NCBI GenBank assembly: GCA_053919585.1
Contig: CM132803.1
From: Euprymna scolopes
Lineage: Eukaryota
Strand: one strand, 5' to 3'
DNA length: 64,000 nucleotides
A model generated the notes under the pieces. It had not been told where the DNA came from and made no database searches. It saw only the letters and a list, made by a program, of their open reading frames with translations. Below are positions 14,367 through 57,546 of the stretch, piece after piece. The position numbers and the translations under genes are program-made. Each line of letters begins with the position of its first letter. Position 1 is the stretch's first letter.

Positions 14367-14665
14367 TGCATCCTGGGAACCCATCATATTTTTTTTTTAA
14401 TTTACCTTATTTTTTACATATAAATATGCAAATATTTCTATTTGAAAAAATATGTTGAAAGTATAAGATCAAATAAATATTATTTATTTCATAAGAAATG
14501 CACCCCTCCCATACTCTAAGAAATAATATAGTAGCCATTACTCAGCTAACACAGTAGGTAGGACTTTATACAACTCCAAAAAAAATATATACTACCGGAA
14601 TATACCAACATCGAAAGTGTACCAGCTGAATTGCTGTCAGATGACATGAACAAATTAAGATTAAA
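14367..14665 (+). promoter_or_regulatory. Putative promoter and non-coding exon 1 of gene 3
   Basis: TGCATCCTGGGA 14367-14378; GTAGCCATT 14531-14539; donor TTAAA|GTAAGT at 14665/14666. Confidence 0.65.
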
Positions 14666-15612
14666 GTAAGTTGGTATATATTGAGTTTTTTTTTTTTAAT
14701 TTCCTTTGTCTCTTTTGTCATGTAAATGATGAAAAACATTCTAAAATTGAAACTGATGAATATAATAATGGTTGCTTTGTGTATGCTAGTTATTTTGCTG
14801 ATGAAAAATTTGAATATAATGATTTATTAAGTATTTTTAGAGTCAGACTTTATTTTATACACACTTCCTTTTTCCCTTTGTATTATTTATTGTCTTTACA
14901 GTGAAATAATATAAAATATTACAAACTCAACAAATAATTGATTATCAGAATTACAATACATTTCTTTTGGCATGATTGATTTCTTGTTTTTCTGTTTCTT
15001 CTTATAGATAGGGAATTTTAACTTGATTTATAAATCAAGTTAAATACATATTTTTAGAATTACCTAATATCAAATAAAATTTACAATGATATTATATCAT
15101 CTTATATCTCAGTTTATGCTATCTTAATAGTGTTCATTTTATAAACCTAATTGTAATCATTTTTTAAAAAAATATTTACTATGACTTTTATTAGTATAAC
15201 AAATGTCTCATTCATTAGATATATTTTAAAACAAATATTTAAGGATTTATATTGATTATTATTGGTATACTTTGTTGAGTCATTAAATAATTTATTTAAC
15301 ATTGAAATAATTAAGTTTTTAACAGTGTAAAACAATCTGATAATTTTTATTTATTCATTGCAGATTTTTAAAATGTGAATCGAATGATTATGTGATCAAT
15401 TTGATTGTTCCTAACATATAATTAGAAACATTTTTAAAAGATTATAAAAATATGGTGCAATATTTTAAATTTCGTTTGAGTTATTTGAAAACACTATTAA
15501 CTAAATTAAATATTATTTCAAAAGCTATTTGTAGATGCTTAATACAATGTTTTGAATATTTGGATTTCAGAGATGGTCAGCTTATGAATGTGTGAGGGAA
15601 TTTACTTTTAAA

Positions 15613-18009
15613 ATGATGCTGAAGATTATAGGTTTAATATGTATAATGATACATATTGGACTCTGCATAGATAAAACTTACCATGTGGAAGAGGGACGAC
15701 AACCAGGTACTTATGTGGGTGATGTTGCAAGCGATTCACAAGTGATGAAGGATATTCCTGATTCTGACCACAGCCTCATTGAATTCAGTCTTCTTCATAA
15801 AGGAGCTACTGGCAATTCTCCATTATTTAAAATATCAAAAAGAACTGGAAAACTTTACACTGCACAAACATTAGATGCAGAATCACTTTGTCATTTTGAA
15901 AAGGAATGTTTTCAAATGGTGAATATAGCAGTAAGGAAATCAACAACTGTTTTCAAGCTATTAGAAATCAAAGTAATAATACAAGACATCAATGATCATC
16001 AGCCAGAGTTTCCGGATAAACAAGTAAATGTAAAATTTGATGAAGATGTATTAATTGGCACAAAAGTTTCAATTCCAAATGCTATAGACAAAGACATAGG
16101 TATTATTAATTCACAAATTACTTATGAACTAAAGAAGACAAAAGATGATCCATTCATATTGTCTACAATGAAGAAAGTTGATGGAACATCTGATCTGAGT
16201 ATAGAATCAGAAGGACTACTCAACAGGGAGATCAAAGACACTTATTCAGTTCAAGTAATTGCAAAAGATGGAGGATCCCCACAAAAACAAAGTGCATTAA
16301 CTGTTCACATTTCAATCACAGATGTAAATGATAATACACCAATATTTTCTAAAAAGGTTTATAATGTTTCTATTGACAGCAAACACAATGAAGCCAAACC
16401 AGTTGTCATATTATCTGCTAAAGATTTAGATTCTGGAGAAAATGGCAAAGTAAAATATCATATTACGGCAAAAACAACTGAAAGCACAAGAAAGATATTC
16501 GACTTAAATGAAATTAATGGAGAATTATTTCTACATAAGAAAGATACAATAAATAAGGAAATGATATACAATTTGTATGTAGAAGCAAAAGATGGAGGTA
16601 ATCCACCTCTACGATCATTAGCAAAGGTTATTGTAATGATGATGAACCAGCAGAATAAAGCTCCATTAATAGATGTAAACTTTTTCTCTACATCCAGAGA
16701 AAACACAGTTGATATTTCTGAGGACATAAAAGTTGGTAGTTTCATTGCTTATGTAAAAGTAAGTGATGAGGATGCTGGTCAGAATGGAGAGGTGAACTGT
16801 GAAATAAAACATGATAAATTTCAGCTTCAGAAGATGGGAATCCTTAAATATCAAGTAATTGTAAAAAGTCCCTTAGACCGTGAAAGAGAAGAGCATCATG
16901 ATATTATAATAATGTGTCAAGATAAAGGATCTCCTCCTTTGAAAAGTAAAAGCAAGTTCTCTGTTAAAGTGATGGATGTTAACGATGTAGAACCAGTGTT
17001 TTCTAAACAATTATTTAAATTCTTCATTGATGAAAACCAAAGATCAAAAATTCCTATTGGCACAATCAATGCCACAGATCCAGACTTGGGACTTGGAGGT
17101 AAACTGTCTTTTTCTTTAGTGAGCACCAATAAACAATTTGTACCATTTCGAATCACTGAAAATGGATTAATCTCTTCAATTATGTCTTTAGACCATGAGT
17201 TTCAAGATACTTATAATTTTGAAGTGTTTGTAAAAGACAAAGGAAGTCCATCATTGAATAACACAGTGAATGTGATTGTTAAGGTGAGAGATGAAAATGA
17301 TAATGCTCCATATTTCACATTTCCCAGTGTTAATCCTTATAATATGGATGTAACATATTACCCGCATCATACAAAGAATATCAGCCAGATAAAGGCATCA
17401 GACAGTGACAGTCAAGAGAATGCATTTCTAAAATATGAAATAATCAGAGGCAATAGCAAACAGATATTCAGCATCAACCAGTACACTGGTTTGTTATGTT
17501 CAACTCATGTCCTAAGCCAACAAGATGCTGGCTCATATGAGCTAGAGTTTCTAGTGAAGGACAGTGGTAGCCCAGTTCTATCAGCCAGAACTACTGTATA
17601 TTTGAGACTGACCGTGAGCAACAAGACATCAGAAATGTTAAATGCTGTTAACATCAAAAAAGATAACAAGATCCACCTGACTTCAGCAATTATCATTGTG
17701 TCTGTAGCAGTGACAATAGCTGTGATCATTACAGCTTCAATCTCAGTGTGTATCCTTCGCTGTTGCAATCCTCGAAGTGTTCCAGTAGCAGAAGGCGGAT
17801 ATGTGAGTAGTGGTCAGAGACATTTGATAAGTCCTCCTTACCCAGCAAATCCTTGGTCTAATGTTGCTCTTCCTACAAGTGATGCAGTTGATATGAGAAG
17901 AAGCAGTCAACCACCAACACCCAGAATGCAAACCCATCCTTATTCAAGTGCTCAACATATGCTGTCTTCTCAAGCATCAAAGCCACAGCCAGTTTCAGTG
18001 TCATCTGAG
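15613..18009 (+). CDS. Pcdh: Protocadherin gene 3, exon 2 CDS; spliced protein 945 aa
   Basis: ATG at 15613 (MMLKIIGLICIMIHIGLC signal peptide); acceptor at 15570; six cadherin repeats and TM; donor GAG|GTAGGT. Confidence 0.95.
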
Positions 18010-18350
18010 GTAGGTTTATTTGCATTTAATCTTTATTATTGCAAATTTGTATATTTCATATAATATTAGTATGTTTATTTTAGCATCTTTATTTAAATAA
18101 GTATACATCTGCTACTTTTTACTTCTGTACTTTTGTTTATTCTAGTTTTTTAATGTTAATATTAACAAAATTTTTTCAATCTTTTTAAAATTGATTATGT
18201 TTATTGAAAGTACCGTATGTCATTTTAAGTACGCACTGTTTTTATTTTTGCTCTGTCAAATATTGCATTTTGACTTGTATATTTTTTGTTGTACTTTATA
18301 TGTTTAACTGCTTTTATCATTTCATAAATTATGATTTTCATTTGATTTAG

Positions 18351-18510
18351 ATGTATAATCAAGATATAGCACTGCCATCTAATAGTAATAGAAAAGACAA
18401 AAGGACAGGCAGAATACAAGAATATTCCAGTAGAAGTTCAATAAAATCTCACCTTGATGACAGGCAAGGATGGAACAATGAAAACTCAAGACAGGCTGAG
18501 GTTGCGTCAG
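18351..18510 (+). CDS. Pcdh: Protocadherin gene 3, exon 3
   Basis: tttAG|ATGTATAATCAAGAT; MYNQDIALPSNSNRKDKRTGRIQEYSS...VAS; donor TCAG|GTAAAC. Confidence 0.9.
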
Positions 18511-19435
18511 GTAAACTACATATTTTTCTATATTTTGCTTAATCTTTTATAATAATAATGCTGAATATTATTAATATTATAACTTAATTAATTAATGGTT
18601 GAATGCAAAATATTTTACTTTGATTCTTGCAGTACATTAAGTATTAATTAAACATATTACTGACACAATTAGAAACATATATATTCAGATAAACAGTAGG
18701 GTATAGATTGGTACATCCCAAACTTGATTTCCTGTCAATATAATTACTTAAATCATACATGGGTAATGATATTATATTAAGAGCTATTAAGTAAATCGAT
18801 CAAAAATACAATTAAATAACTTCAAATAGCAAATGTTGGAAGTGTTGAGTTGGAGAAACATTTCAAATAGACTAAGTGCCTCATTTAGCACCATAGCATA
18901 TTTTTGTTTTGAAATGAAAATGTAACCCGTAGATCATGACATGTTTTGGCCAGCCTATTCATGGATGAATAAGTCTGGTCACACTCGGTTGATGTAGGTA
19001 TTCTATGGATACGATGGGATTGGCTTAGTGAGCACGATTGTCTGATGATAGGACAAATATCTGTTTTATAATTTGTGAATAATCATAGTTTTTCAGAGTT
19101 ATAGCAATATTTATCTCCCCTTCTCAGATGTATAATGTTGTCTAGTAAGATAGTTTGTAATTAATATTGGTTTAGAGAATCCAGTGAGATTGCTAGAATA
19201 CAGATGCCCATCTCTATTTGCATAAAGCCGTTATATCCTAGTCATGAAATGTTAGTATTTAACACATGAAAAACAATTAGGACTGACTGAATGGAAAATT
19301 TGTTTTTCTCCAGTTTGTCCAGAAATAGAGAATATGTCATTAATGACTTTCCCATTTAACTGCTAACTTTCTGACTGAAATCAATGTCACATTTGACATA
19401 CCAAAATATCTCCCCTATCCCTTTTGCATCCCTCC

Positions 19436-19523
19436 ATACATTTGCTCGCTCACTGATGAAGATGATACATTTGCTCTCTCACTGATGAAGATGATACATT
19501 TGCTCTCTCACTGATGAAGATGA
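19436..19523. repeat. 29-bp tandem repeat x3
   Basis: ATACATTTGCTCTCTCACTGATGAAGATG starting at 19436, 19465 and 19494. Confidence 0.9.
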
Positions 19524-20049
19524 AACTTTTGTTTGAATCTAAGGAAAAAAATTTTTAAATCCTATAAAATTATTTTAAATTAAATTTAACTGCTTGTTTT
19601 TATCTCTTTATTTTGCTTAAACAAAATATTAATTTATACTTAGAAAACAGATTTTACAAGACATTCTTGTCTCCTTTTATTTTGATTTTTAATAATCATA
19701 TTGCCTTTATGATCATTCTGATGAAGATATCAACTTCACCATGGGAGGTTTATCAATCAGTGTTCCTTACTAGGACTGAGGACCCTAGCATGGAAAGGGG
19801 AGTAACTTTGAGAATTCTTTCTTTTCATTAATACTAATAAATGCATTACTAGTTAATTTTTTTCTTAACTTTTTAAATTTTCTATTTTATTTCTTAACTC
19901 TGTTTCCCATTACACTTATCTGAGTTCACCATTTGATCTAATCATTGCAATAAAATGTTGATTCAGTCCAATTTCTTTATTACACAAAAAGACAAGAACT
20001 ACTCACAAAATTCTTTGAAATGGTTTTCCTAAAAAGATATTTTACAGAG

Positions 20050-20900
20050 TTACAAGGCAAATGGAAAGAAAAAAAAACTTTGGAGACTCAAGATGTATTG
20101 ATGGCTGCAAAAACTTCTATCAGCAATAAACTACACAAGCATGGCCTTATATGGCATTGTCTAAAGAAAAAGATGCTCTGCTAAACAAATAGAGAGGCTT
20201 GATTGGAATTAAGTCATGAATATTTAGGTGAGCAAAAAAGGTTTTGTGAGATAAAAAATGAATTATTTGGAAAAAATTGAACTTATTAGATACCATCCAA
20301 AGAATACCATCCATAGTGTAAGGTTTGCTGGTGGAAGCATTATGGTATGGAAGTGTTTTTCTGATCATGATACTGCAACAGTAGTACAATAGTAGTAGGT
20401 ACTATGAATAGAGTGAATAGAGTGATGTATTACAGTATTTTAGCCATTCCTGGATATGACATTAAACTATATCCAGTGGTGAGGCCCCAGCTTGTGGGCT
20501 TTGGGGAGTGTGGAGCCACCCTTTAATTGACATTGCTCCGAGGTCCACTCAGACCCGGAGTGGTAGTACCTGTTAGGATACCAACTATGGGTTAAATAGA
20601 AACCGACTTGAAAACAACAAATATATTCTATTAAAAATTTTTTCTTTAAAATCACTGGATTCGGCATTAAATAACCTGAAAAGGGTTGATATGCTGTAAA
20701 ACAACCAACCAACCAACCAACTACAGTATTTTAGAAAAAAATCCGTTCACCTCCACCCAACAGTTGAGCTCATTTTGAACAACATAATGATTTAAAATAC
20801 ACTGCTCTTAATTTGAGCTCAAAATGGTTTACAAAGAACAAGATCAAAGTACTATAAAAGGCAGATCTGAATCTAATTCAAAATTTGTGACAACAAATTG
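20050..20900 (+). mobile_element. Tc1-family transposase remnant interrupted by a SINE
   Basis: VRFAGGSIMVWKCFS (~20320; Tc1 TVKHGGGSIMVWGCF), FEQHNDLKYT (~20775; FQQDNDPKHT), DLNLIQNL (~20865; SPDLNPIENLW). Confidence 0.75.
20444..20721 (+). mobile_element. SINE-like retroposon insertion with a 13-bp target-site duplication
   Basis: Exact TSD TACAGTATTTTAG at 20431-20443 and 20722-20734; 3' (CAAC)n tail. Confidence 0.85.
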
Positions 20901-22199
20901 AAAATTCTAATTTTATTTAAAAGCATAAGAAGCATAGTTGAATTAAAGAGTATTCCCTTATTTTGGCCTTTAGTCATCTCATTTCATGAGTGATGTTTCT
21001 GACAAAAGGGGAAAAATTGCTGTTTTCTGTATCAAAATCTATTGATATAACATTTATCATTGGCTAGTTTTTGACCTTGAAGTGTTTTTTAACTCCAGAC
21101 ATCAAGTAGCTTCATGTCTTGTCTAGAATAATTTCTATAGATAAAAATAAAAGTTAAGTTGCAAAGAGTTTGTAGACAATAATAACAAGCATGTTTTAAC
21201 CAAGAATGTATTAAGTTATGAAAACTGGTATATATAAATATTTTTTTTACTAGCAAAGTAAAAAATTGGATTTTTAAAGTTTTGTTGTAAATTGATCATG
21301 ATACATATTAACTAATTAATTGGAAAGAACTCATCTTTTTGCCATTGTTGGTTAGTTTGTTCATCTTCTGATTGTTTCAAAATTAGTTCATTTATTTTTC
21401 CTGAAACTTTTCATGAAAATTATATGATCATGAGCGCAGAAACTGAGACTTTTTTCAGTAAAATTTGTATTTGTCCTTTAAAAAATTAAAATGTCCCAAA
21501 ATCTGCATTTTTGCATCTTTCTAAAATTTCCTTAATTTGCCTTTGCTCAAAAATAATTTAATGGTCATTTATATGAATCAAACATTGGCGATCCTATAAA
21601 AACTTTGATTTATCCCAATATCTAAAATGCCATTTATTAGATTTTATCTCTCCAAAATCTACCAACAGTTGTGATTAACAATTATTTTTATATATATATA
21701 TATTTTATTCAAGTATTTCTAATCTTAAGAAAATATTCATTTTCCTCTCATGATGTTGACATTGCTTTTCCAAATTAACAAAAAATACAATTTTTCTTTT
21801 CTCACATTTATTAGAAATTTCCTTCATTATTTTTATTTTACAAAATTTACCAAAATTTTATGGTCACTGGTTCTTTACATAAATCAAACACTGATCACCT
21901 GAGGAAAAATATGGTTTTCTATTCTAGTGATGCAAAAATGCTTTAGCATTGGTAAAATTTGTAATTTTTTAAAATATCTAAACTCCCAGTTTTTAACTTT
22001 TGTTCCTTCCAAACAAGGCATATTGCCACTGAAATATAAGGAGATACTGTGATAAGGGCCAAATTTATAGAGGAGCAACATACATGTGAACTTGGGTAGC
22101 AAGATCTTTGTTCATATTATATTTAAATTTCTGCATATTGATACAGTTAACAAAAATAGGGAGGAAATTCCAAAGACAAGTAGTCCAATGAAAGAAGCT

Positions 22200-25100: not shown

Positions 25101-25409
25101 ATGAGTTGTTAATATTTTGTGACAGAATGTTATTAAATTTACCCAATTTTCTGATTAATAATTATTTACATGATTCAATTACTGATGATAACAGGAAATC
25201 TCAGGAAGATAAAATATATATACCACCTCTAAACAAATGGTTTAAAAAAGCAATATTTCACAATACTTGAGTTATTCTCCCCCAATTCAACCAGAACTTA
25301 CAAAAAATGTTTATTCAAGTAGTGGTTAAGGGCATAAATGTTTTACTTGTTAAATACGATCGCTTTTCTCATTTTTATAGTTAATTAATTTTTATTTTAT
25401 ATCTTGCAG

Positions 25410-25690
25410 ATGTATATCCTTCTCAATACTGTAATCCTCCTCCTCCTACTTCACAAACAGATCAACAACAAACATCAGAAATCAGACTGTTGGGACAGAC
25501 TGTTAACTATCCTAGTGATACTACAATAGTAGCCAGGGGCTTTTATACACCCTATATGAATGAAAACAGTCCTAATTCAGATAGTAATAGCAGTTACCCT
25601 TCTAATAGACATTTACAATCAAGAAATATCTCTACAAGTGGAAGTCAAACTTCAATCAATAGACCATTACCTCCTGTACCAAACATCTAA
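25410..25690 (+). CDS. Pcdh: Protocadherin gene 3, terminal exon 4
   Basis: cttgCAG|AT GTA TAT CCT; VYPSQYCNPPPP...RPLPPVPNI*; total CDS 2838 nt. Confidence 0.9.
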
Positions 25691-26334
25691 ATGAAATCCA
25701 TAGAAATATTTTATCATTCTTATTGTTAGTTTAGGAACTTGAAAACATGAAAACGAAAAATAACTGCAACATTTTTAATAGTTAATGAATTAACAAGATT
25801 TAATAAACACCATTAAAATATTATGTAACTCACTCAGAAATTAGTTTTATTTGTTAATCTCAACTTCATACATTTGAGTATTTAGAAAAACACTTGAAAT
25901 GGTGATTTTAATATAAGAAATGTTGAAATTCTATATTTTAAACTTGGGAAAGAATATACGACTTCACTTGATTTATATATTTTAATTAATTTTTTTGATA
26001 GATTTAAAAGCATTATTAACTGAATTTATTTTATTTAAATACACATTAATTAATATTTTTCATAAATGTATAGTTAATTAAAAGTATTTCTTTATATAAA
26101 ATTAAACAGAACTTAAACTGTGTAAAAGTATTATTTTATACTTATTTTAAATTATCAAAATACTTATTAAGTACTAAATAAATAATTATATAAAATTATA
26201 CTGCTCTAAACCTACTCAGTTATTAAGCATATATCAGTATTAAAATATTAAAAGTTACAATGTTATTCTCCAATGCTACTTGAGATAGAAAGAAAAACAC
26301 AAAGCAGAAAGGAAGAATAGACTGTTTTGACTAT

Positions 26335-26698
26335 TGCATTTTGGGAATCTATTTTAATTTTTTTAAATAATTTCAAATAATTGATATTAGTGTCAATTAT
26401 TGTCTATAATTATACTAATGCGTATTCAGAAATAAATGTAAATAGAAAAATATTTCCAAAAATATAAATCAGTTATGTTCATCCAAAAAGAGGCTATTTA
26501 CTGGTAACGTTTAATGAGGGAGGTGGAGTAGGAAATGAGAGAAATGAACTGCAGCAGCCATTATACAGACGGCATACTATTCAGGACTGCTGTAACTTTA
26601 AACACAAAATGTACAACTATAATGTTGAATTATAGAAACATCACATATACTCCAGTTAATGTAACTGAAATTTGAAGGAAACAGATTTAAGAACAAAG
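26335..26698 (+). promoter_or_regulatory. Putative promoter and non-coding exon 1 of gene 4
   Basis: TGCATTTTGGGA 26335-26346; GCAGCCATT 26554-26562; donor ACAAAG|GTAATT at 26698/26699. Confidence 0.7.
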
Positions 26699-27708
26699 GT
26701 AATTTTCTTATTGTTATTTCTTGTATTCACTGGCTTTTACTATTTGTGCTATACTGAATAAAAAGAAAGCCAACTTTGTATTTCATCTTTTTTGTTGTTT
26801 TAATCATTGTTTGAAATATCTAAAAGTAATAAGATTTCATAATTCTTTATCATTCTCTATAAAAATATCACAACTTTATAAATGTTTCTAAAGATTATGT
26901 AATTTTGATGATTATTGATATTTGAAGAATTTGAATGCAAAACGAGTTAAATGCCATATCTTTACAAAAGATGATGCATTTAAATACTTTAAGCCATTGC
27001 AAAATATTGTTTTACATAATATGATATTGGCAAAATATTTTTTTTTTGTAATCAATCAAAATAAGCTTTTATTAATGTCTGGATTTGATATATTTACTCT
27101 TTTATTGTTTAATTTAAAGAAAATAGGATAATCACATTTTGTAAGCAGATTCTTAATATCCAGAATTATTTTTGGATACTCATTTAAATTAAAGTGTTTA
27201 CAAATCGGAAAAATTCTTTATCTATGTTGTTTTGTTTTTCATTTTCTTCTAATGAACTTTCATTTTGTTTTTTATATCATCAATGATCATCCATATAAAT
27301 TTTAACATTTTAATTTAATCTAAATAAACATTTATGGATAATGCTTTTCAAAAGTATTTTTAAAATACTTAAACCAAATCATGTGTAAAATAATATTTAA
27401 AAAATTATTAATACATTTTTTTAAAAGGAATTGAGTGTAGTGTTTTAATTGCATAAAACCAAAAATAACAAAAAAAAAACAAAAAAGAACATATATATCA
27501 TTTACATTAATCATTATCATGAGTAAATATAATCTCAAAAGCATGCCGGAAGTATTTACAATTATTTTTTATATAGGAATTTATATCATTTTTGCTCATC
27601 TTTAAATAAATATATAAGAAAATTTTACTTTCTTAAAACAAGGTTTTAATTTAACATTTCAGAAAATATTCCCAGTACATCAACTAAACAGCTTTATTAT
27701 CGAAAAGG

Positions 27709-30102
27709 ATGCTAAACAAAATATTTCTGCTGGTTTGGATCATAAAAGCTTGTATGTGTACAGATCTTACATACAATGTGGAAGAAGGGAAAAGTCCAGA
27801 TATTTATGTTGGTGATGTTGCTGCTGATTCACATGTGATGAAGGATATTGCTGAGTCTGACCATAAACTAATCGGATTCAGCCTTCTTCATAAAGGGGCT
27901 ACTGCGAATTCTCCATTATTTAGAATATCGAAAGGGACTGGAAAACTATACACTGCACAAACATTAGATGCAGAATCTCTTTGTATTTATAAAAAAGAAT
28001 GTTTTCAGATGGTTGATGTTGCAGTTAGAAAATCAACAACTGTTTTCAAGTTATTAGAAATAAAAGTAATAATACAGGACATCAATGATCATCAGCCAGA
28101 GTTTCCTGATAAACAAATTACTATTGAATTTGAAGAAGGAGATGGTAAAGGTATGAAAAGATCAATTCCAAATGCCATAGACAAAGATGTAGGAATCACT
28201 AATTCACAAATTACTTATGAACTAAAAAAGACCAAAGATGAACCTTTCATATTGTCTACAATGAAAAAAATTGATGGAACATCTGATCTGAGTATAGAAT
28301 TAGAAAGAATGTTAAACAGAGAAGTCAAAGACTCATATAAAATTCAAGTAATTGCAAAAGATGGAGGATCACCACCAAAACAAAGTGTATTGACTGTTCA
28401 CATTTCAATCACAGATGTAAATGATAATAAACCAATATTTTCTAAAAAGGTTTATAATGTTTCTATTGACAGCAAACATAATGAAGCCAAACCAGTTGTC
28501 ATATTATTTGCTAAAGATTTAGATTCTGGAGAAAATGGCAAAGTAAAATATCATATTACGGCAAAAACAACTGAAAGTACAAGAAAGATTTTTGATTTAA
28601 ATGAAATTACTGGAGAATTATTTCTACATAAAAAAGACATATTAAATAAGGAAGTAATATATGAATTATATGTAGAAGCGAGAGATGGAGGTAATCCACC
28701 TTTACGATCATTAGCAATGGTTTTTGTAAATGTTATGAACCAGCAAAATAAAGCTCCATTAATAGATGTGAACTTTTTTTCCACATCCAGAGAAAATACA
28801 GTTGATGTTTCTGAAAACATAAAAGTTGGTAGTTTCATTGCTTATGTAAAAGTAAGTGATGAGGATGCTGGTCAGAATGGAGAGGTGAACTGTGAAATAA
28901 AACATGATAAATTTCAATTGCAAAACATGGGAACCAAGAAATACCAAGTGATAGTGAAAACTCTTTTAGACAGGGAAATTGAAGATCATCACAGTATAAT
29001 TATCAAATGTCAAGACAAAGGATCTCCTCCTCTTCAAAGCAAAAGGACATTTTCTGTACATGTGATTGATGTTAATGATGTACAACCAGTGTTTTCTAAA
29101 CAATTATTTAAATTCTTCATTGATGAAAACCAGAGATCGAAAATTCCTATTGGCACAATCAATGCCACAGATCCAGACTTGGGACTTGGAGGTAAACTGT
29201 CTTTTTCTTTAGTGAGCACCAATAAACAATTTGTACCATTTCGAATCACTGAAAATGGATTAATCTCTTCAATTATGTCTTTAGACCATGAGTTTCAAGA
29301 TATTTATAATTTTGAAGTGTTTGTAAAAGACAAAGGAAGTCCATCATTGAATAACACAGTGAATGTGATTGTTAAGGTGAGAGATGAAAATGATAATGCT
29401 CCATATTTCACATTTCCCAGTGTTAATCCTTATAATATGGATGTAACATATTACCCGCATCATACAAAGAACATCAGCCAGATAAAGGCATCAGACAGTG
29501 ACAGTCAAGAGAATGCATTTCTAAAATATGAAATAATCAGAGGCAATAGCAAACAGATATTCAGCATCAACCAGTACACTGGTTTGTTATGTTCAACTCA
29601 TGTCCTAAGCCAACAAGATGCTGGCTCATATGAGCTGGAGTTTCTAGTGAAGGACAGTGGTAGCCCAGTTCTATCAGCCAGAACTACTGTATATTTGACA
29701 CTGACTGTAAGCAACAAGACATCAGAAATGCTAAATGCTGTTAACATCAAAAAAGATAACAAGATTCACCTGACTTCAGCAATTATCATTGTGTCTGTAG
29801 CAGTGACAATAGCTGTGATCATTACAGCTTCAATCTCAGTGTGTATCCTTCGCTGTTGCAATCCTCGAAGTGTTCCAGTAGCAGAAAGCGGATATGTGAG
29901 TAGTGGTCAGAGACATTTGATAAGTCCTCCTTACCCAGCAAATCCTTGGTCCAATGTTGCTCTTCCTACAAGTGATGCAGTTGATATGAGAAGAAGCAGT
30001 CAACCACCAACACCCAGAATGCAAACCCATCCTTACTCAAGTGCTCAACAAATGCTGTCTTCTCAAACAACAAAACCCCAATTGCTTAACGATTCATCTG
30101 AG
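27709..30102 (+). CDS. Pcdh: Protocadherin gene 4, exon 2 CDS; spliced protein 945 aa
   Basis: ATG 27709; acceptor atttCAG| at 27662; six EC repeats and TM; donor GAG|GTAGGT. Confidence 0.95.
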
Positions 30103-30543
30103 GTAGGTTCATTAACTTGTAGTTTTAGATTTTTATATTTGCAAATTTGATAAACTGTTATAGTTTTAGAATCGTTTTAGAATTCTTATAGAAATTTTTA
30201 TCTTTTATTTATAAATTCCTATTTATTCTATAGATATAGAAAATCCATGCAATTTCTTTGTTTTTGATAGAATTAATGTAATATCTGTTTCTGCAGCCAT
30301 ATTTATCTTTTTCTCTCTCTGTAACTGAATGTTCATATAGGCAAATCTTATCTTTTTCTCAAGAACAAAATGTCCTTAATAATACCGTATTTAGAATCAA
30401 TAAAAAGACTGAATACTTTTTTGTCTACAACATACACAGAAAATACTGCAAAACAAAAGAAAACATTTTTTCATGATTGGATTTTGACAGGTTGTAAATA
30501 ACAAAGAAACACAGATAATTGCAATAAGTTCATGCCACAAGTA

Positions 30544-31380
30544 CAGTAAAAGTGTCGCCCTAAAGAAAACAACACCACAGGTTTATTTTAAAATTTTTAT
30601 TAAAAAAATCAATTCAGATAACTTGATTATGTAGTAGAGCTGCCAACTATTCAATGTAGTCGCCTTCAGCCTCAATCACTGCCTTGATATGGGTCTGGAA
30701 GTGGGAACATGCTTTTCTACAAGCGCCAGTAGGAGCTTGGCGAATACTCGGCGGATGACAGTGATCAGGCTGGCTTTGGTGTTGTGGGGGGTCATGTTGC
30801 TGATGTTTTCAACGTATGACCAAATGTAGTCTAGTGGGTTCAGATTCGAGAAGGAGGTGAGAGGTAGTGAAAGAAGGGTACAAAGACTACTTTGGACTTG
30901 TGGGATGGCACTGAGTCCTGCTGCCTTACCCAGGGGATCACCACATTCTTCAGAACATCTAGGTACACTTTGGTGTTGACTTTCAAGCTGATCGAAGGAA
31001 GCTGTGAGGTGACATGATTTGGCCTTACTTGAAACCACATCAAAGATAACTGTGGCCAGAAACTTTGTTTTCATCACCCTGAGAATGTGCCTGTTATTCG
31101 TGGCAATCCAGCGATGCATTTTGAAGGTGCTGGCAATAGTCCTGTTGTCATAACCTGGATCAGTAAAGAGCATGAGTTGTACAGTGGCATATCTCTGATC
31201 TCGCTCGTTGAATATTGTGTCACGTTCAGACATGATAGAAGACTCCTATTACTCTTGAGATTTGTATACAACTGGCCAACTAGTAAGTGGTTTGCAACAA
31301 CAAAAGAAAATTGGTTTTCATCAAACAGCAATGGAATTATGTCATCTTTTCTAGGGCGACGATTTTATCGGTTCACCCTG
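30544..31380 (-). mobile_element. Internally deleted Tc1/mariner (DDD-type) DNA transposon in gene 4 intron 2
   Basis: TA-flanked; right TIR TAGGGCGACGATTTTATCGGTTCACCCTG, left TIR partly deleted (CAG..TGTCGCCCTA); transposase motifs QQDSVPSH and NLNPLDYIW. Confidence 0.85.
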
Positions 31381-35527: not shown

Positions 35528-36233
35528 ATCAATGTTTACAATATTTATCATTTTTATTATTAGTTTAAAAATGAAAAATATAAAACTGAAAAATTACTGT
35601 AACATCTTTTATATTTAATGAACCTAGAGAAACCAGTAAACACTATTAAAATATTACATTACTCACTTATAGAAATGTGTTTTTTTGTTTCAACTTGATT
35701 GATGCAATGATTTAACTATTTTTAAACTAATTTTAAATTGTAATTATAAGTATAAAAATATTGGATAATAATAATTTAATGATAAGGTATAGTAAGTTTT
35801 ATATTTGATATTTTAAATAAAATCTATGCATTCAGATTTTAATGGGTTTTCTAATGTGCTTTAAAGTGTGATGAAATGAGGATCTGTAATTTAAATGTAA
35901 ATAAATAAATTACATAAATATACTTTAATTACCACCAATTCTTTTTAGTGTATAAAATTTTTCCTATTATATAAATATAAAAAAGGTTATTAAATAATGT
36001 CTCTGTATATAAAATTAAACAGAACCAAAATTGTTCAAATATATTCATTTAAACTAAATTATAAAAAAATGTATAAAATAATAAAATTATATTAAATTGC
36101 ACTTCTATAAACTTACTTAGATATTAAGAATATTGGAATTCAACTGTTTAAAGTTACAATGCTATTCGTCAATGCTACTTGAGATAGAAAGAAAAACACA
36201 AAGTAGAAAGGAAGAAGAGAATAATTTGACTAT

Positions 36234-36589
36234 TGCATTTTGGGAGGGTTTTTTTTTTTTTTAAATTAAATTGATATAAATGTCAATTTCCACTTTTATT
36301 TTTACTTAAGTTTGTTAAGAAATAAATTTTAGAAGAAAAATATTTATAAAAATATAAACTAGTTATCTTCATCCAAAAGGAGGCTATTTACTGACAACGT
36401 TTTATGAGAAAGGAAGAGGGGTAAAGGGAGAGAAATGAACTGCAGCAGCCATTACACAGACGGCACACTATTCAGGACTGCTATAACTTTAAACACAAAA
36501 TGTACAACTATAATGTTGAATTATAGAAACATCATATATACTCCAGTTAATGTAACGGAAATTTGAAGGAAACAGATTTAAGAACAAAG
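36234..36589 (+). promoter_or_regulatory. Putative promoter and non-coding exon 1 of gene 5
   Basis: TGCATTTTGGGA 36234-36245; GCAGCCATT 36445-36453; donor ACAAAG|GTAATT at 36589/36590. Confidence 0.7.
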
Positions 36590-50708: not shown

Positions 50709-53102
50709 ATGGTACTAAAGGAATTATTTGTACTGGTTTGGATGATAAATGCTTGTATGTGTACAGATTTTACATATAATGTGGAAGAAGGAAAAAGTCC
50801 AGATATTTATGTTGGTGATGTTGCTGCTGATTCACATGTGATTAAGGATATTGCTGAGTCTGACCATAAACTCATTGGATTCAGCCTTCTTCATAAAGGG
50901 GCTACTGCGAATTCTCCATTATTTAGAATATCGAAAAGAACTGGAAAACTATACACTGCACAACCATTAGATGCAGAATCTCTTTGTATTTATAAAAAAG
51001 AATGTTTTCAGATGGTGGATGTTGCAGTTAGAAAATCAACAACTGTTTTCAAGTTATTAGAAATCAAAGTAATAATACAGGATATCAATGATCATCAGCC
51101 AGAGTTTCCGGATAAACAAGTTAATGTGAAATTTAATGAAGATGTTGCCATAGGAACTAAAGTATCAATACCAAATGCTATAGACAAAGATGTAGGAATC
51201 ATTAATTCCCAAATTACTTATGAACTAAAAAATACCAAAGATGAACCTTTCATATTATCTACAATGAAGAAAATTGATGGAACAACTGATCTGAGTATAG
51301 AATTAAAACGACTTCTCAACAGAGAAAACAAGGATTCTTATACAATTCAAGTAATTGCAAAAGATGGAGGATCCCCACCAAAACAAAGTGCATTAACTGT
51401 TCACATTTCAATCACAGATGTAAATGATAATGCACCAATATTTTCTAAAAAGGTTTATAATGTTTCTATTGACAGCAAACACAATGAAGCCAAACCAGTT
51501 GTCATATTATCTGCTAAAGATTTAGATTCTGGAGAAAATGGTAAAGTAAAATATCATATTACGGCAAAAACAACTGAAAGCACAAGAAAGACATTTCATT
51601 TAAATGAAATTACTGGAGAATTATTTTTAAATAAAAAAGACATATTAAATAAGGAAGTAATATATGAATTATATGTAGAAGCGAGAGATGGAGGTAATCC
51701 ACCTTTACGATCATTAGCCATGGTTTTTGTAAATGTTATGAACCAGCAAAATAAAGCTCCATTAATAGATGTGAACTTTTTTTCCACATCCAGGGAAAAT
51801 ACAGTTGATGTTTCTGAAAATATAAAAGTTGGTAGTTTCATTGCTTATGTGAAAGTAAGTGATGAGGATGCTGGTCAGAATGGAGAAGTGAACTGTGAAA
51901 TAAAACATGATAAATTTCAATTGCAAAACATGGGAACCAAGAAATACCAAGTTATAGTGAAAACTCTTTTAGACAGGGAAACTGAAGATCATCACAGTAT
52001 AATTATCAAATGTCAAGACAAAGGATCTCCTCCTCTTCAAAGCAAAAGGACATTTTCTGTACATGTGATTGATGTTAATGATGTAGAACCAGTGTTTTCT
52101 AAACAATTATTTAAATTCTTCATTGATGAAAACCAGAGATCGAAAATTCCTATTGGCACAATCAATGCCACAGATCCAGACTTGGGACTTGGAGGTAAAC
52201 TGTCTTTTTCTTTAGTGAGCACCAATAAACAATTTGTACCATTTCGAATCACTGAAAATGGATTAATCTCTTCAATTATGTCTTTAGACCATGAGTTTCA
52301 AGATACTTATAATTTTGAAGTGTTTGTAAAAGACAAAGGAAGTCCATCATTGAATAACACAGTGAATGTGATTGTTAAGGTGAGAGATGAAAATGATAAT
52401 GCTCCATATTTCACATTTCCCAGTGTTAATCCTTATAATATGGATGTAACATATTACCCGCATCATACAAAGAACATCAGCCAGATAAAGGCATCAGACA
52501 GTGACAGTCAAGAGAATGCATTTCTGAAATATGAAATAATCAGAGGCAATAGCAAACAGATATTCAGCATCAACCAGTACACTGGTTTGTTATGTTCAAC
52601 TCATGTCCTAAGCCAACAAGATGCTGGCTCATATGAGCTGGAGTTTCTAGTGAAGGACAGTGGTAGCCCAGTTCTATCAGCCAGAACTACTGTATATTTG
52701 ACACTGACCGTAAGCAACAAGACATCAGAAATGTTAAATGCTGTTAACATCAAAAAAGATAACAAGATCCACCTGACTTCAGCAATTATCATTGTGTCTG
52801 TAGCAGTGACAATAGCTGTGATCATTACAGCTTCAATCTCAGTGTGTATCCTTCGCTGTTGCAATCCTCGAAGTGTTCCAGTAGCAGAAGGCGGATATGT
52901 GAGTAGTGGTCAGAGACATTTGATAAGTCCTCCTTACCCAGCCAATCCTTGGTCTAATGTTGCTCTTCCTACAAGTGATGCAGTTGATATGAGAAGAAGC
53001 AGTCAACCACCAACACCCAGAATGCAAACACATCCTTACTCAAATGCTCAACAAATGCTGTCATCTCAAGCACCAAAACCAGCTTCAGACTCTATTTCTC
53101 AG
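50709..53102 (+). CDS. Pcdh: Protocadherin gene 6, exon 2 CDS; spliced protein 940 aa
   Basis: ATG 50709; acceptor at 50655; six EC repeats and TM; donor CAG|GTAATA. Confidence 0.95.
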
Positions 53103-53162
53103 GTAATAAATTTATAAATTGTATTGATATTTTTTAAACTGTGTTTTTCTTTTTGAAACAGT

Positions 53163-53193
<31 letters not shown>

Positions 53194-54237
53194 GGGCATG
53201 TGTGTGTGTGCATACATAAATATATATGTATATAAAAATGCATNNNNNNNNNNNNNNNNNNNNNNNNNNNNNNNNNNNNNNNNNNNNNNNNNNNNNNNNN
53301 NNNNNNNNNNNNNNNNNNNNNNNNNNNNNNNNNNNNNNNNNNNNNNNNNNNNNNNNNNNNNNNNNNNNNNNNNNNNNNNNNNNNNNNNNNNNNNNNNNNN
53401 NNNNNNNNNNNNNNNNNNNNNNNNNNNNNNNNNNNNNNNNNNNNNNNNNNNNNNNNNNNNNNNNNNNNNNNNNNNNNNNNNNNNNNNNNNNNNNNNNNNN
53501 NNNNNNNNNNNNNNNNNNNNNNNNNNNNNNNNNNNNNNNNNNNNNNNNNNNNNNNNNNNNNNNNNNNNNNNNNNNNNNNNNNNNNNNNNNNNNNNNNNNN
53601 NNNNAGCTGAGTGTCCAGTCAAACCTAGAACAATTTTACTGGTTACCCTTACACATCCTTAGGACAGATTACATGCAAGTCAAATCTGTTAGGAATCCAA
53701 ATAATAGTATCTACATAGAAGACAAACATTTCACTTTATTATGTAGATAAATGTTTTATTATTTCCCATAAAATGGCTTCATGACAGATTTCTTCTGACA
53801 TCCTCTTCTCATTCGTATTTTTATTTGTGATGTTTTGTTCAATTTCAGAACAATTTATTTTTAAATGAATTAGATCGAAATTTTTTATAACAAGCAACAC
53901 CAGATAATTATCAATCACTGTTGATAGTAATGATGTACAAGAGTATTATTTCACAAATTTTTATAATTTTGTCAGGCAAAATATTTACTTTTTTTATCTC
54001 CATTTTACTTATGAGATTGTATGGCTTTTGTAAAAATGTAGGTTTACTTTGATTTTTGATTGTTGAATAATTTCAACAAATTATAATCTTCACCATTTTT
54101 CAAATAATTTGCTAAACTTCTGTTATACAAATCTATTAAGCAAAAATGCATTACAAAATTCCTTATTAGCTCTGTTTTTTTTTCAAAGAACACATTCATT
54201 CATTATATCATTAATCATTATTTTCCATTACCATTAG

Positions 54238-54400
54238 ATGTATATTCAAGATGTTGCTTTGCCCTCTGGTGGAAACAGAAATAAGAAAAGGATTGACTCA
54301 ACACAAGATTATTCCAGTCAAAGTTCCATAAAATCTTCTCACTATAATGACGGACAGGGTTGGAATGATGCTGACTTAAAACAAACAGACGCCATGGGAG
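54238..54400 (+). CDS. Pcdh: Protocadherin gene 6, exon 3 (absent from the ORF track)
   Basis: ccatTAG|ATG; manual translation MYIQDVALPSGGNRNKKRIDSTQDYSSQSSIKSSHYNDGQGWNDADLKQTDAMG; donor GGAG|GTTAGT. Confidence 0.88.
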
Positions 54401-55556
54401 GTTAGTTACAATAATAAGATATTATCAGATAGTGATCTTGGTTCATCTTTGAATTATTTTATAGTTCATTTATATAAGACTCATTTTAAATTTTATTTGT
54501 GATTTTTATGTAGAAAAAACTATTTCATTTATTTATACAGAATACAGAATCAAACTTTTATTATTGATAAAACCTTTGAATATTAAATACACATTTTTTA
54601 CTCATATTTCATTTACTCATTGTTCTTTTGCTCTGTAAGAAAAGAGCATTGATAAGTAATTGTTATTTAATATGTTAGGTCAAAAATAAAACCAACCTAA
54701 TTGTTTCTGAATTATGAATATATTCATGACATATAAAACAATTTGCAAATCTCAGCTTGCATTATAATTATTGATGCTTTTGATTGAAAATTATTTTTTA
54801 ATGTAATAATTGGAATGCAAAAATACATAGGCTTACAAATATTAAATGACAATTTTATAAATATGTTTTACTTTGATAGCTCTAATTTTTAAGTTTGATT
54901 TGCCCATGTGACTAATTTAAGCTATATAAAAATATATTTATTATCTGATCAATTTTGAATAGAAATTGTTTTGATACAAACAGAAAAGGAAGCTTCAACC
55001 AACCTGATTCAATTAATTAATGAAACCTCTATTGAATTTATTTTTTTATATTATTAATTTTTCTAATCAAGTCTGTGATACATTGTAATGTTATTGAAGT
55101 AGATTTATTTTTTATATTTCAAATTCACACTAGCTCTTTTGAATGAAAGAAACATATCTATTTACTGAAGTGATTTTTAAAGTTAAATGTTATAAAAAAA
55201 GATATGAAAATGCTTAGTTACATCGTTAATTTAATCAGGAAATAGTTGTACAATAGTTGACATGAGATAGAGAACTTAATATAACTTATTAGGTACAATA
55301 GAAAAGTGGCGCGTTTTGTTTTGTATCTATAATTTCTATTGCATGTTTATAGTAAATGTTTCATTATTATAAAATCTCTCATGTTTTAAACAATCATATT
55401 TTTCAAAGCAGTTAGTTTATTATTTTAACTCCATTATGAATATGTTTATTTCAGTCTACTTATATTTGTTTAAAATATAGAATTTTCATAGAATTTTCTT
55501 TGCAAATATTTTTTCAGATTTAATGATTACTAGATTAACAATGAATCATTGTGTCA

Positions 55557-55606
<50 letters not shown>

Positions 55607-56017
55607 AAAGTATATAATTTCTTAACTTTGATATTGATTTTTACTATGATCAAAGTCCAATGATTTCCCTCTCTACTCTTTTCCCTCTTTTAATTATTTA
55701 TCGCACTTCATTCCTTTCACCACTTCTCTTACAATTCCCCTTTATTCATGTTATTTGCCCATCTTCATACTACCTAAAACATTTATTTACAAATACAATG
55801 TGCACAATGACAAGAAAGCAAGCAAGATAATAAACATTAGAGCTTTAGTAGTAGATAAATTTTGAATTTAATTTACAATTATATCATTTCGACATAACAT
55901 AGTTTTCATGATCATAATTGTAGTATCAAATATTGTATAAAAAGTATGAAGTTTTTATATCGTTTCTGTTTGATCATAAATTGGAAGCTAGTTTATTTTC
56001 TTTCATTTTATTTTCAG

Positions 56018-56283
56018 GTGTATATACTTCACAATATTGCAACCCTCCTCCTTTGCATAATGAACAACAAACAGAGATGCGACCTTTGGGACAGACTTCC
56101 AATTACCCAAGCGATACTACAATTGTGGCCAGGAGGTTTTATACACCGTATCTGAATGAGAAAAATCCTAGTCAAGATAGCAATAGTGGTAGCTCTTCTC
56201 ATAGAAATATACAATCAAGAACTGTATCTACAAGTGGTAGTCAGACTTCCATCAATAGACCACTGCCACCTGTGCCTCACTAG
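56018..56283 (+). CDS. Pcdh: Protocadherin gene 6, terminal exon 4
   Basis: ttttCAG|GT GTA TAT; VYTSQYCNPPP...RPLPPVPH*; total CDS 2823 nt. Confidence 0.9.
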
Positions 56284-57271
56284 GTCCTTTCCTGCTGAAA
56301 TAATGGACATTTAAAAAAAATTGTAATCGTTTTTAAAAACAAAACAAATCGTTTAAATTTAATTTACGTTAAAATATATTTTAGTTAAAATTAATTGTAC
56401 ACTTGAGACTGTAAATAATGATCGCATTTTTCTATTCTTTTGAATTACGCTTATGGTCACACACATGTGCATATACAGACATATATCTTCTTTTAAAAAA
56501 GTTCACACTAAAAGTAGAAAAAAATGTTTTAAAAACCAATGAAATGGTATTTATTTTAACGCTATTTTACAGTGCTCAATATTACAGATTAAAAACATAA
56601 CACAATTTTTTAAGTTAGGATCTTAGCTAAAATTTTTAAAAACTTAAAAAAATTTTAAAGCATGAACAAATTTCAAAATCTGAGAAATATATGTGAATAA
56701 TTTAATATTCACATGATTATTTATTAATTATAAGTTATCATTCCATACATTATTTAGACAACATTAGAACTTTTATGTTTTCAATTTAATAATCATTATT
56801 CATCATATAAAAATATTTTTTTTGTGATTCTATACTTCTTTAAAACTATTAAACATTTCTAATTTAGTTGCGTTTAATTATATGATGATTTACGTTTTTT
56901 TTATAAATAAATTAAAGCAACTAATCATTTTTATAAAGGAATAGTTACAAATTTAGAAAATAATATAATTTAACATTATTTGTAAACAGCAGTTTTACTT
57001 TATTTATTTATTTTCAAGTTATATTTGTTGTATTGATTGAAGATCAGAACAATAAAATAAATGAGAAAATAATGAGAAAATATTCAAATAAAATTATATC
57101 ATAATCATTTCGGCTCTTAAGGTATTTTAATATTCTGACTTTTACTTCTTTAAATCAATAACAACAAAATCATTTTGACGTACAGCCTGATAGTTGTGTT
57201 AGCCTAGAATGAAAAAGAAAGAAAGAAAGAAAGAAGAAAATAAACTATGATGAATGCAACTTACTTTACAC

Positions 57272-57546
57272 TGCATTCTGGGAGATCGTTTTGCTTTTTT
57301 AGCCAAGTTTAATTATTTTTTAATAAATATATTTTAGAATAATTATGAACAAAATTAAATAGATTCTAGCATTTGTAGGAATTAAATCATCAGTTTTAAT
57401 ACTAAATGCTGTATATAGAGCAATGGAAAGCTTGTAGCAGCCATTTTGCAAGTAATATATTAAATAGGACTACTTGGACATGAATTAAGAATCCATGCTT
57501 TTGTTGATATAGTTGCCATCCGATATGAACAAGTTTAATAAAAAGG
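57272..57546 (+). promoter_or_regulatory. Putative promoter and non-coding exon 1 of gene 7
   Basis: TGCATTCTGGGA 57272-57283; GCAGCCATTTT 57437-57447; donor AAGG|GTAAGT at 57546/57547; acceptor ttaCAG| at 58453. Confidence 0.65.

What the first reader, a model, noticed from the sequence alone, without database searches (positions are those of the whole stretch)
14367..57447. Repeated promoter grammar before each Pcdh gene: TGCATYYTGGGA (ZNF143/Staf-like), then GYAGCCATT (YY1-like) 165-220 bp downstream
Seen: TGCATYYTGGGA at 14367, 26335, 36234, 49577 and 57272, each preceded by a purine-rich GAAAG(G)AAGAA-like tract. GYAGCCATT lies at 5906, 14531, 26554, 36445, 49793 and 57437, each followed 110-151 nt later by a GT donor. 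The motifs persist in genes 3 and 7, whose surrounding sequence does not align with genes 4-6. Known: TCCCAnnATGCA is the core Staf/ZNF143 site and GCCATTTT is the YY1 core, often near TSSs. Vertebrate Pcdh promoters each carry a CTCF-bound conserved sequence element used in stochastic promoter choice. Inference: this is a convergent promoter element, possibly supporting promoter choice with different factors.
Basis: partly seen in the sequence, partly recalled or inferred. Interest (0 to 1): 0.85.

Follow-up and report, generated by a model that had tools for sequence, protein, structure and literature searches.

The report
Shared promoter-leader module of squid protocadherins
Each gene in this row of squid-type cell-recognition (protocadherin) genes keeps the same small set of control motifs around a short non-coding first exon, which gives a testable handle on how these genes are switched on, but the proteins that read the motifs and the exact transcription start are still unknown.

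Summary
TGCATYYTGGGA occurs 5 times (0.01 expected) and GYAGCCATT 6 times (0.5 expected), all on the gene strand. A profile of the proximal block hits exactly once per protocadherin gene.

Genes 4-6 are recent duplicates, so there are 3 independent lineages for the distal box and 4 for the proximal block. Gene 2 lacks the distal box. Outside genes 4-6 the flanks have diverged to chance-level identity, so the motifs look like selective footprints inherited from a common ancestor, not convergence between the genes.

RNA contigs confirm that a non-coding exon 1 of gene 4 (ends 26698) is spliced to 27663, 46 nt before the ATG. The distal box meets the published Staf/ZNF143 site criteria. TGTATAWAG lies exactly 27 nt before the proximal block in genes 6 and 7 and nowhere else in the window.

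RNA also covers sequence upstream of both motifs in genes 3 and 4, so the start site is unresolved. The proximal block recurs inside the 5' leaders of distant protocadherin transcripts.

The ZNF143 and YY1 assignments and any role in promoter choice are untested. Other first-reader notes report the same grammar elsewhere in this genome; I could not verify them. The assembly gaps touch no motif, exon or intron.

The parts
14367..14378 (-). Gene 3 distal Staf/ZNF143-like box. Read on the - strand it is TTCCCAGGATGCAATATG.
26335..26346 (-). Gene 4 distal Staf/ZNF143-like box (TTCCCAAAATGCAATAGT on the - strand).
36234..36245 (-). Gene 5 distal Staf/ZNF143-like box.
49577..49588 (-). Gene 6 distal Staf/ZNF143-like box.
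57272..57283 (-). Gene 7 distal Staf/ZNF143-like box (CTCCCAGAATGCAGTGTA on the - strand). This is the closest copy to the canonical site as I recall it.
26285..26327 (+). Gene 4 purine-rich GGAA-containing tract just upstream of the distal box. Equivalent tracts lie at 14317-14359, 36184-36226, 49527-49569 and 57222-57264. Gene 2 has a GAAGGAAGTAAT version about 220 nt before its proximal block.
5906..5940 (+). Gene 2 proximal block, GCAGCCATT...CAGGATA.
14531..14565 (+). Gene 3 proximal block, GTAGCCATT...TAGGACT.
26554..26588 (+). Gene 4 proximal block, GCAGCCATT...CAGGACT.
36445..36479 (+). Gene 5 proximal block.
49793..49827 (+). Gene 6 proximal block.
57437..57471 (+). Gene 7 proximal block. 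It contains GCCATTTTG, the fullest YY1-type core among the six.
49766..49774 (+). Gene 6 TATA-like TGTATAAAG, 27 nt before the proximal block. The T of TATA is at -31 from the A of CCATT.
57410..57418 (+). Gene 7 TATA-like TGTATATAG at the identical offset. This and the gene 6 copy are the only two matches to TGTATAWAG in the window.
26490..26503 (+). GAGGCTATTTACTG, invariant in genes 4-6 (also at 36380 and 49726). It may be an alternative TATA-like element about 30 nt before the X13 RNA boundary at 26531.
26560..26698 (+). Gene 4 core of non-coding exon 1. The 3' end at 26698 is set by the RNA splice joint; the 5' end is not fixed, because RNA contigs reach 26275 and, in X2, 25956. Equivalent exon 1 3' ends: 6056 (gene 2), 14665 (gene 3), 36589 (gene 5), 49936 (gene 6), 57546 (gene 7).
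26699..27662 (+). Gene 4 intron 1 (GT..AG, 964 nt), with zero RNA depth in three of four runs. Inferred acceptors (TTTCAG or TTACAG) put the exon 2 starts at 7590, 15571, 37258, 50656 and 58454.
27709..30150 (+). Gene 4 complete protocadherin coding sequence in exon 2 (813 aa). The others are 7660-10164, 15613-18063, 37316-39763, 50709-53117 and 58514-60938 (gene 7 is split into two frames).

Best explanation
Every protocadherin gene in this decapodiform-cephalopod array is a two-exon unit. A short non-coding leader exon is spliced to one exon that holds the whole coding sequence.

Around the leader exon lies a module that was inherited with each tandem duplication and has been kept by selection while the surrounding DNA diverged to chance level. 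From 5' to 3' the module has:
- a purine-rich GGAA tract;
- an inverted Staf/ZNF143-type box, 165-220 nt upstream of the proximal block;
- in some genes a TATA-like element at -31;
- a roughly 35-nt proximal block, GYAGCCATT-(N21)-AGGAY, at the 5' edge of the robustly expressed part of exon 1.

The most likely working model is a per-gene RNA polymerase II promoter. Zinc-finger-type activators bound at the distal box recruit the transcription machinery, and the proximal block acts as an initiator or downstream core-promoter element.

Shown here: the motifs, their conservation, the exon-intron structure, and transcription of the leader.

Inferred only: that the elements act as DNA-binding sites, which proteins bind them, where the main start site lies, and any role in choosing which gene a neuron expresses.
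For: - Enrichment and one-per-gene placement. nhmmer E-values are 1e-10 to 2e-15 at six places, with no orphan copies.
- Footprinting: outside genes 4-6, flank identity is 0.46-0.60 against a null of 0.52 +/- 0.03.
- An unbiased search for the best-kept 12-mer with at least 4 G or C across genes 3, 4 and 7 returns the distal box itself (P = 0.0065).
- Among genes 4-6, conservation peaks at exon 1 (0.85-0.97) and at -250 to -10 (0.73-0.79). The intron and distal upstream region are at 0.59-0.69.
- A GT..AG splice from 26698 to 27663 appears in two RNA runs, and the intron has zero depth in three of four runs.
- All five distal boxes have CCCR at positions 3-6 and C at position 12, the published SBS definition.
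- TGTATAWAG occurs only twice in 64 kb, both exactly 27 nt before the proximal block.
- The proximal block recurs with the same internal spacing in the 5' leader of a protocadherin transcript only 57% identical in protein (nhmmer E = 3e-4). Partial copies appear in two others.
- In all four runs, contig depth over the exon 1 core is at least that of the upstream region. In X13 it is about 25 times higher.
Against: - RNA contigs run continuously from 26275 (X1, X2), 26324 (X5) and 25956 (X2) through both motifs. In X13 the RNA starts at least 29 nt before the A of CCATT.
- For gene 3, RNA runs hold 0.29-0.91 of the words of 14231-14666, where exon 1 alone would give about 0.26.
- The distant transcript L127 extends 63 nt upstream of its block. 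The block is therefore not at the extreme 5' end of many transcripts, and the distal box is sometimes transcribed.
- Gene 2 has no distal box.
- The TATA-like element is present in only two genes at -31.
- No other genomic locus or species could be examined, and no binding data exist.
- Contig depth is a poor measure of abundance, and contigs carry no strand information.
Confidence: 0.6

Rival explanations
1. The motifs act as RNA elements within a longer 5' untranslated leader, for example in translation control, stability or mRNA localisation in neurites. They would not be DNA-binding sites.
For: RNA covers both motifs in gene 4 and, in deep libraries, most of the gene 3 upstream stretch. 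All copies are in the sense orientation. The proximal block lies inside the leaders of distant protocadherin transcripts.
Against: The six exon 1 copies have no conserved RNA structure (consensus -2.84 kcal/mol, no supporting covariation). The sequence between the two motifs is unconstrained. Gene 2 lacks the distal box. In X13 the distal region is almost untranscribed while exon 1 is covered. A TATA-like element at a fixed -31 argues for DNA-level function of the proximal region.
Confidence: 0.12
2. The elements are promoter DNA sites, but they are read by lineage-specific zinc-finger proteins or other factors, not by ZNF143 and YY1 orthologues. The resemblance to vertebrate motifs would then be coincidental.
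For: Only the cores match. The ACTACA submotif is absent, and positions 13-18 of the distal box differ from the canonical site as I recall it. Five of the six proximal blocks read GCCATTAY and not GCCATnTT. C2H2 zinc-finger genes are expanded in cephalopods (PMC9023564). No paper in the library links ZNF143 to molluscs.
Against: All five distal boxes meet both strongly conserved features of the published SBS definition. Gene 7 carries a 12 of 12 match to the canonical core as I recall it.
Confidence: 0.2
3. The recurrence carries no function. It reflects recent duplication or gene conversion of the upstream region.
For: The upstream regions of genes 4-6 align throughout. Another note on this window (s1-259181) reports gene conversion in the coding block.
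Against: In genes 3 and 7 the flanks are at chance-level identity while the 12-nt and 35-nt islands persist. Conversion tracts that short are not expected. The proximal block is also found in a transcript of a protocadherin only 57% identical in protein.
Confidence: 0.05
4. The conserved YAG in GYAG|CCATT, or the CAG in TTCAG|GACT, is a 3' splice acceptor. 'Exon 1' would then be an internal exon fed by a far-upstream leader exon.
For: YAG is invariant directly before CCATT. Distant protocadherin transcripts show alternative leader exons.
Against: No splice joint or loose end at 26557-26560 or at 26583-26584 is among those listed for the four runs (19 further loose ends were not shown), and contigs run straight through. 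The sequence upstream in genes 4-6 is purine-rich, not a pyrimidine tract.
Confidence: 0.03

Closest known systems
Conserved sequence element (CSE) and CTCF sites at vertebrate clustered protocadherin promoters
   Same: There is one stereotyped element set per gene or variable exon in a tandem protocadherin array, in a fixed orientation relative to the gene.
   Different: No CTCF-type motif lies at these promoters. Each gene here has its own non-coding leader exon and a complete coding exon with its own stop codon, so there are no shared constant exons. The motif sequences are unrelated. Stochastic choice has not been shown.
Staf/ZNF143 binding sites in vertebrate snRNA distal elements and mRNA promoters (PMC3082894; PMC11687419)
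   Same: The CCCR core, the C at position 12 and the AATGCA stretch match. The location is promoter-proximal. The 165-220 nt distance from the proximal block is about that of snRNA distal elements, by my recollection.
   Different: The region is AT-rich and is not a CpG island. The ACTACA submotif is absent. The target is a neuronal adhesion gene family, not housekeeping or mitochondrial genes. Neither the factor nor its binding has been examined in cephalopods.
SBS elements in the human PCDH-alpha HS5-1 enhancer (bioRxiv 10.1101/2023.09.27.559875)
   Same: A ZNF143-type site is tied to the regulation of a protocadherin cluster.
   Different: In human the sites are in one distal enhancer, not at each promoter. 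The looping role of ZNF143 is disputed: PMC11687419 attributes its apparent overlap with CTCF to antibody cross-reactivity.
YY1/Pho sites and initiator elements at or just downstream of start sites
   Same: A GCCAT core sits at the 5' edge of the transcribed leader. CCATT fits an initiator pattern. A TATA-like element lies at -31 in two genes.
   Different: The flanks fit the fuller YY1 consensus only in gene 7. RNA starts upstream of the element in gene 4. These comparisons rest on my recollection of the consensus sequences.

Membership tests
Staf/ZNF143 binding site (SBS) | CCCR at positions 3-6 of the 18-bp site | tested here: met
   All five boxes read TCCCA(A/G) on the - strand. The definition comes from PMC3082894.
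Staf/ZNF143 binding site (SBS) | Highly conserved C at position 12 | tested here: met
   In all five copies the C of ATGC falls at position 12.
Staf/ZNF143 binding site (SBS) | Bound by a ZNF143 orthologue that the genome encodes | not testable with these tools
   No tool supplied a ZNF143 query sequence. No library paper links ZNF143 to molluscs.
Staf/ZNF143 binding site (SBS) | Lies close to a transcription start site | tested here: inconclusive
   The box lies 165-220 nt before the leader block, but RNA contigs start both upstream and downstream of it.
YY1/Pho site | GCCAT core | tested here: met
   Present in all six proximal blocks.
YY1/Pho site | Extended consensus GCCATnTT (from memory) | tested here: inconclusive
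   Gene 7 has GCCATTTTG. Genes 2-6 have GCCATTAC or GCCATTAT.
TATA plus initiator core promoter | TATA box about 30 nt before an initiator A | tested here: inconclusive
   TGTATAWAG lies at -31 in genes 6 and 7 only. It is decayed in genes 4 and 5, shifted in gene 2 and absent in gene 3.
TATA plus initiator core promoter | Transcripts begin at the initiator A | tested here: not met
   In gene 4, RNA extends at least 29 nt (X13) to at least 285 nt (X1, X2) upstream of the A at 26560. No data exist for genes 6 and 7, the two that carry the TATA-like element.
Vertebrate clustered-protocadherin CSE/CTCF system | CTCF-type motif in each promoter | tested here: not met
   With up to 2 mismatches allowed, none of the 8 matches falls in a promoter module. 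The single perfect match is intergenic, at 54260.
Vertebrate clustered-protocadherin CSE/CTCF system | Variable exons spliced to shared constant exons | tested here: not met
   Each of genes 2-6 has a full-length open reading frame ending in its own stop codon (gene 7 is split into two frames). The RNA loose ends near the 3' end fall at several different positions.
Vertebrate clustered-protocadherin CSE/CTCF system | Stochastic choice of one promoter per cell | not testable with these tools
   This needs single-cell isoform data.

The most novel reading that the evidence does not exclude
Cephalopod protocadherin arrays evolved their own per-gene choice module. A ZNF143-type box and a YY1-type leader element would stand in for the vertebrate CSE/CTCF pair, so that two lineages with large brains independently solved neuronal self-recognition by stochastic promoter choice using different architectural zinc-finger proteins.
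Probability: 0.1. Interest if true: 0.85.

Novelty: new variant of a known kind. Interest (0 to 1): 0.45.

Why it matters
A 2023 review calls the large cephalopod protocadherin clusters 'still-enigmatic' and notes there are no functional data on their regulation (PMC10658181). I found no paper in the library that describes promoter elements for them.

A defined and conserved module with two nameable candidate factor classes turns the question into bench tests: CAGE, ATAC footprints, DAP-seq, reporter mutagenesis and single-cell isoform counts.

Shared promoter motifs among tandem duplicates are expected in themselves. The interest lies in three things: the footprints survive complete divergence of the flanks, the distal box matches the SBS definition, and the leader block reaches protocadherins that are only 57% identical in protein.

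Tried and rejected
- Genomic DNA of other protocadherin loci or species. Protocadherins encoded in ENA assembly ERZ21867824 (65-86% identical) and in Acanthosepion pharaonis (NCBI) were located, but no DNA was served because the files are too large. The exact gene 4 protein is not on record.
- Metagenome scan with the motif pair. It gave 120 or more hits. None encodes a cadherin or resembles the promoters beyond the pattern, so they are chance matches.
- Rfam scan of the whole window at gathering thresholds: 0 hits.
- Conserved RNA structure in exon 1: none. The per-sequence fold call failed on a length limit and I did not repeat it.
- CTCF-type motif at the promoters: none.
- The exonic SBS-like core ACCCAGAATGCA in every coding exon as a second site. 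I rejected it as evidence: it lies in a stretch that is near-identical between the genes, so it is one event, and one hit with one mismatch is within chance.
- The splice-acceptor reading of YAG|CCATT: no listed joint supports it.
- Literature on ZNF143 in molluscs or invertebrates: nothing usable.
- Leader of transcript L001 (P0024): no block, so the element is not universal.


Full report
**What the window holds.** The window is AT-rich (22-36% G+C). It carries six protocadherin open reading frames of about 800 aa, all on the + strand, plus the 3' end of a seventh at its start. The nearest named relatives are Acanthosepion pharaonis protocadherins at about 60% identity, so the source is a decapodiform cephalopod. 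The RNA runs that hold the sequence are labelled 'mollusc metagenome' or carry a coded organism name.

**The observation.** Both motifs lie at the stated coordinates, on the gene strand only, and far above chance: 5 hits against 0.01 expected and 6 against 0.5. A profile of the 57-nt proximal block finds exactly six places, one per gene, at E = 1e-10 to 2e-15, and nothing else.

There are three qualifications.
- The upstream regions of genes 4, 5 and 6 align from end to end, so they count as one observation.
- Gene 2 has the purine tract and the proximal block but only a decayed remnant where the distal box should be. That place is sequenced, so the N gap at 5484-5619 does not explain the loss.
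- With two mismatches allowed, the distal pattern is no commoner than chance.

**Assembly gaps.** The two gaps named by the scan's program lie in intergenic DNA. One is at 41632-41882, between genes 5 and 6. The other, at 53244-53604, starts 127 nt after the gene 6 stop codon. No motif, exon or intron is affected. Continuity across the gaps could not be tested.

**Are the motifs more than shared ancestry?** Outside genes 4-6, pairwise identity of the upstream, exon 1 and intron compartments is 0.46-0.66. Random non-homologous pieces of the window give 0.52 +/- 0.03. The flanks are therefore saturated with change.

I ran an unbiased search across genes 3, 4 and 7 for the best-kept 12-mer with at least four G or C. 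It returns TGCATTTTGGGA itself, with three mismatches in total (P = 0.0065 from 2000 Markov resamplings). In genes 3 and 7 the box sits at the same offset, 164 and 165 nt.

Among genes 4-6, conservation peaks over exon 1 (0.85-0.97) and the 250 nt before it (0.73-0.79). It falls to 0.59-0.69 in the intron and further upstream. The perfectly kept runs in genes 4-6 include the two purine tracts, the distal box, GAGGCTATTTACTG, the proximal block, TCAGGACTGCT and the splice-donor region.

These are selective footprints in paralogues that share an ancestor. They are not convergence between the genes.

**Gene structure.** RNA contigs from two runs join 26698 to 27663 across a GT..AG intron of 964 nt. 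The intron has zero depth in three of the four runs. The acceptor lies 46 nt before the ATG at 27709, so exon 1 is non-coding. The same TTTCAG or TTACAG acceptor and AG|GTRAG-type donor are present in all six genes.

**Where does transcription start?** The sequence points to the proximal block. CCATT fits an initiator pattern. TGTATAWAG occurs only twice in the 64 kb, each time exactly 27 nt before GCAGCCATT, in genes 6 and 7. Those two genes belong to lineages whose flanks are otherwise saturated.

The RNA does not agree cleanly with that reading.
- In gene 4, contigs run unbroken over 26275-26622 (X1, X2) and 26324-26629 (X5). X2 also covers 25956-26300.
- In X13 the contig begins at 26531, next to a Tn5 adapter. 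That is 29 nt before the A of CCATT, and almost nothing lies further upstream.
- In gene 3, RNA runs hold between 0.29 and 0.91 of the sampled words of 14231-14666. Exon 1 alone would give about 0.26.

Depth over the exon 1 core is at least that of the upstream part in all four runs. In X13 it is about 25 times higher. The simplest reading is a main start region near the proximal block plus variable upstream starts near the distal box. Contig depth is a poor measure and contigs have no strand, however, so antisense or read-through RNA is not excluded.

**Factor identity.** The published definition of the Staf/ZNF143 site is an 18-bp sequence with CCCR at positions 3-6, a conserved C at position 12, and degenerate positions elsewhere (PMC3082894). 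Read on the - strand, all five boxes meet both criteria. Gene 7 reads CTCCCAGAATGCA. The ACTACA submotif is absent, but it accompanies only about a fifth of vertebrate sites. That paper also reports that such sites can drive transcription in both directions, which could account for RNA on both sides of the box.

For the proximal block only the GCCAT core is common to all six copies. The fuller GCCATnTT form, which I recall from memory, is present only in gene 7. I could not check whether the animal has ZNF143 or YY1 orthologues, and found nothing on this in the library.

No CTCF-type motif lies in any promoter module.

**Reach beyond the window.** Genomic DNA of other loci was not obtainable. 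Assembled RNA contigs of more distant protocadherins were.
- The 5' leader of P0096 (57% protein identity to gene 4 in the search) carries GCTGTCAGTACACACACTACACACTTGCTAGGACTGC. It has the same internal spacing as the window block and is 15 of 16 identical to gene 2 over TACACAGACTACACAA (nhmmer E = 3e-4 against the set of leaders).
- P0103 carries CATACTACTCAGG, and P0107 carries CAGCAGCAG...CAGGACTC with a shorter spacing. These two matches are weak.
- P0024 has nothing comparable.
- In the P0096 contig the block lies 63 nt from the 5' end, so it is again inside the transcript.

The proximal block is therefore older than this cluster and belongs to the leader of many, but not all, protocadherins of this group.

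Other first-reader notes on this genome describe the same grammar 61 kb before the window and 246-296 kb beyond it. They are unverified leads.

**Rivals.** An RNA-level role for the motifs is kept at 0.12. The motifs are transcribed at least sometimes, but there is no conserved structure, and the fixed TATA-like element argues for a DNA-level function. Simple duplication or gene conversion without function is disfavoured by the saturated flanks. A hidden splice acceptor at YAG|CCATT has no support among the listed RNA joints. That the sites are read by factors other than ZNF143 and YY1 remains quite possible (0.2).

**Comparison and novelty.** The arrangement works like the vertebrate one in having a stereotyped element set per gene. 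It fails the membership tests for that system: there is no CTCF motif and there are no constant exons.

A preprint reports ZNF143 sites in the human PCDH-alpha HS5-1 enhancer. Its looping interpretation is contested.

A 2023 review calls the large cephalopod protocadherin clusters 'still-enigmatic' and notes that functional data are lacking. No paper in the library describes their promoters. I rate the finding a new variant of a known kind and of moderate interest. The motif architecture is solid. The mechanism, the factors and any link to promoter choice are open.

Noticed in passing
window 270-281, 9969-9980, 17919-17930, 30012-30023, 39619-39630, 53015-53026, 60800-60811: Every coding exon carries an SBS-like core, ACCCAGAATGCA, in the sense orientation about 130 nt before the stop codon. 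It encodes PTPRMQTHPY in the cytoplasmic tail. Its 42-nt context is nearly identical in all seven copies, so it is one event, and at one mismatch it is within chance. It is the mirror image of the promoter box.
   Followed up: partly
window 54260-54272 (-): There is a single perfect match to a CTCF-type core, CCACCAGAGGGCA (0.01 expected). It lies between genes 6 and 7, about 1.1 kb after the gene 6 stop codon and 3 kb before the gene 7 distal box.
   Followed up: partly
L127-L135 (Logan RNA contigs of P0096): A distant protocadherin shows alternative 5' leader exons joined to a common acceptor about 118 nt before the ATG. One form has an extra internal leader exon.
   Followed up: partly
window 58514-60938: The gene 7 coding sequence is split into two overlapping frames (58514-59245 and 59202-60938). 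This is either a frameshifted pseudogene or an assembly error. Its promoter module is nevertheless the best match to the canonical motifs.
   Followed up: no
window 1-64000: An Rfam scan at gathering thresholds finds no RNA family anywhere in the window. The hammerhead ribozymes that another reader noted at 3505-4108 therefore do not reach curated scores.
   Followed up: partly
window 30054-30102: High-depth RNA contigs over the 3' third of gene 4 branch into several different continuations at 30054, 30066, 30075 and 30102. This is consistent with many paralogues sharing the stretch that is near-identical between the genes and diverging in their tails.
   Followed up: no
window 26285-26327, 36184-36226: An ACAAAG (Sox/TCF-like) word lies about 30-35 nt before the distal box in genes 4 and 5 only. 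Another note on this genome says this pairing is usual elsewhere in the cluster.
   Followed up: partly
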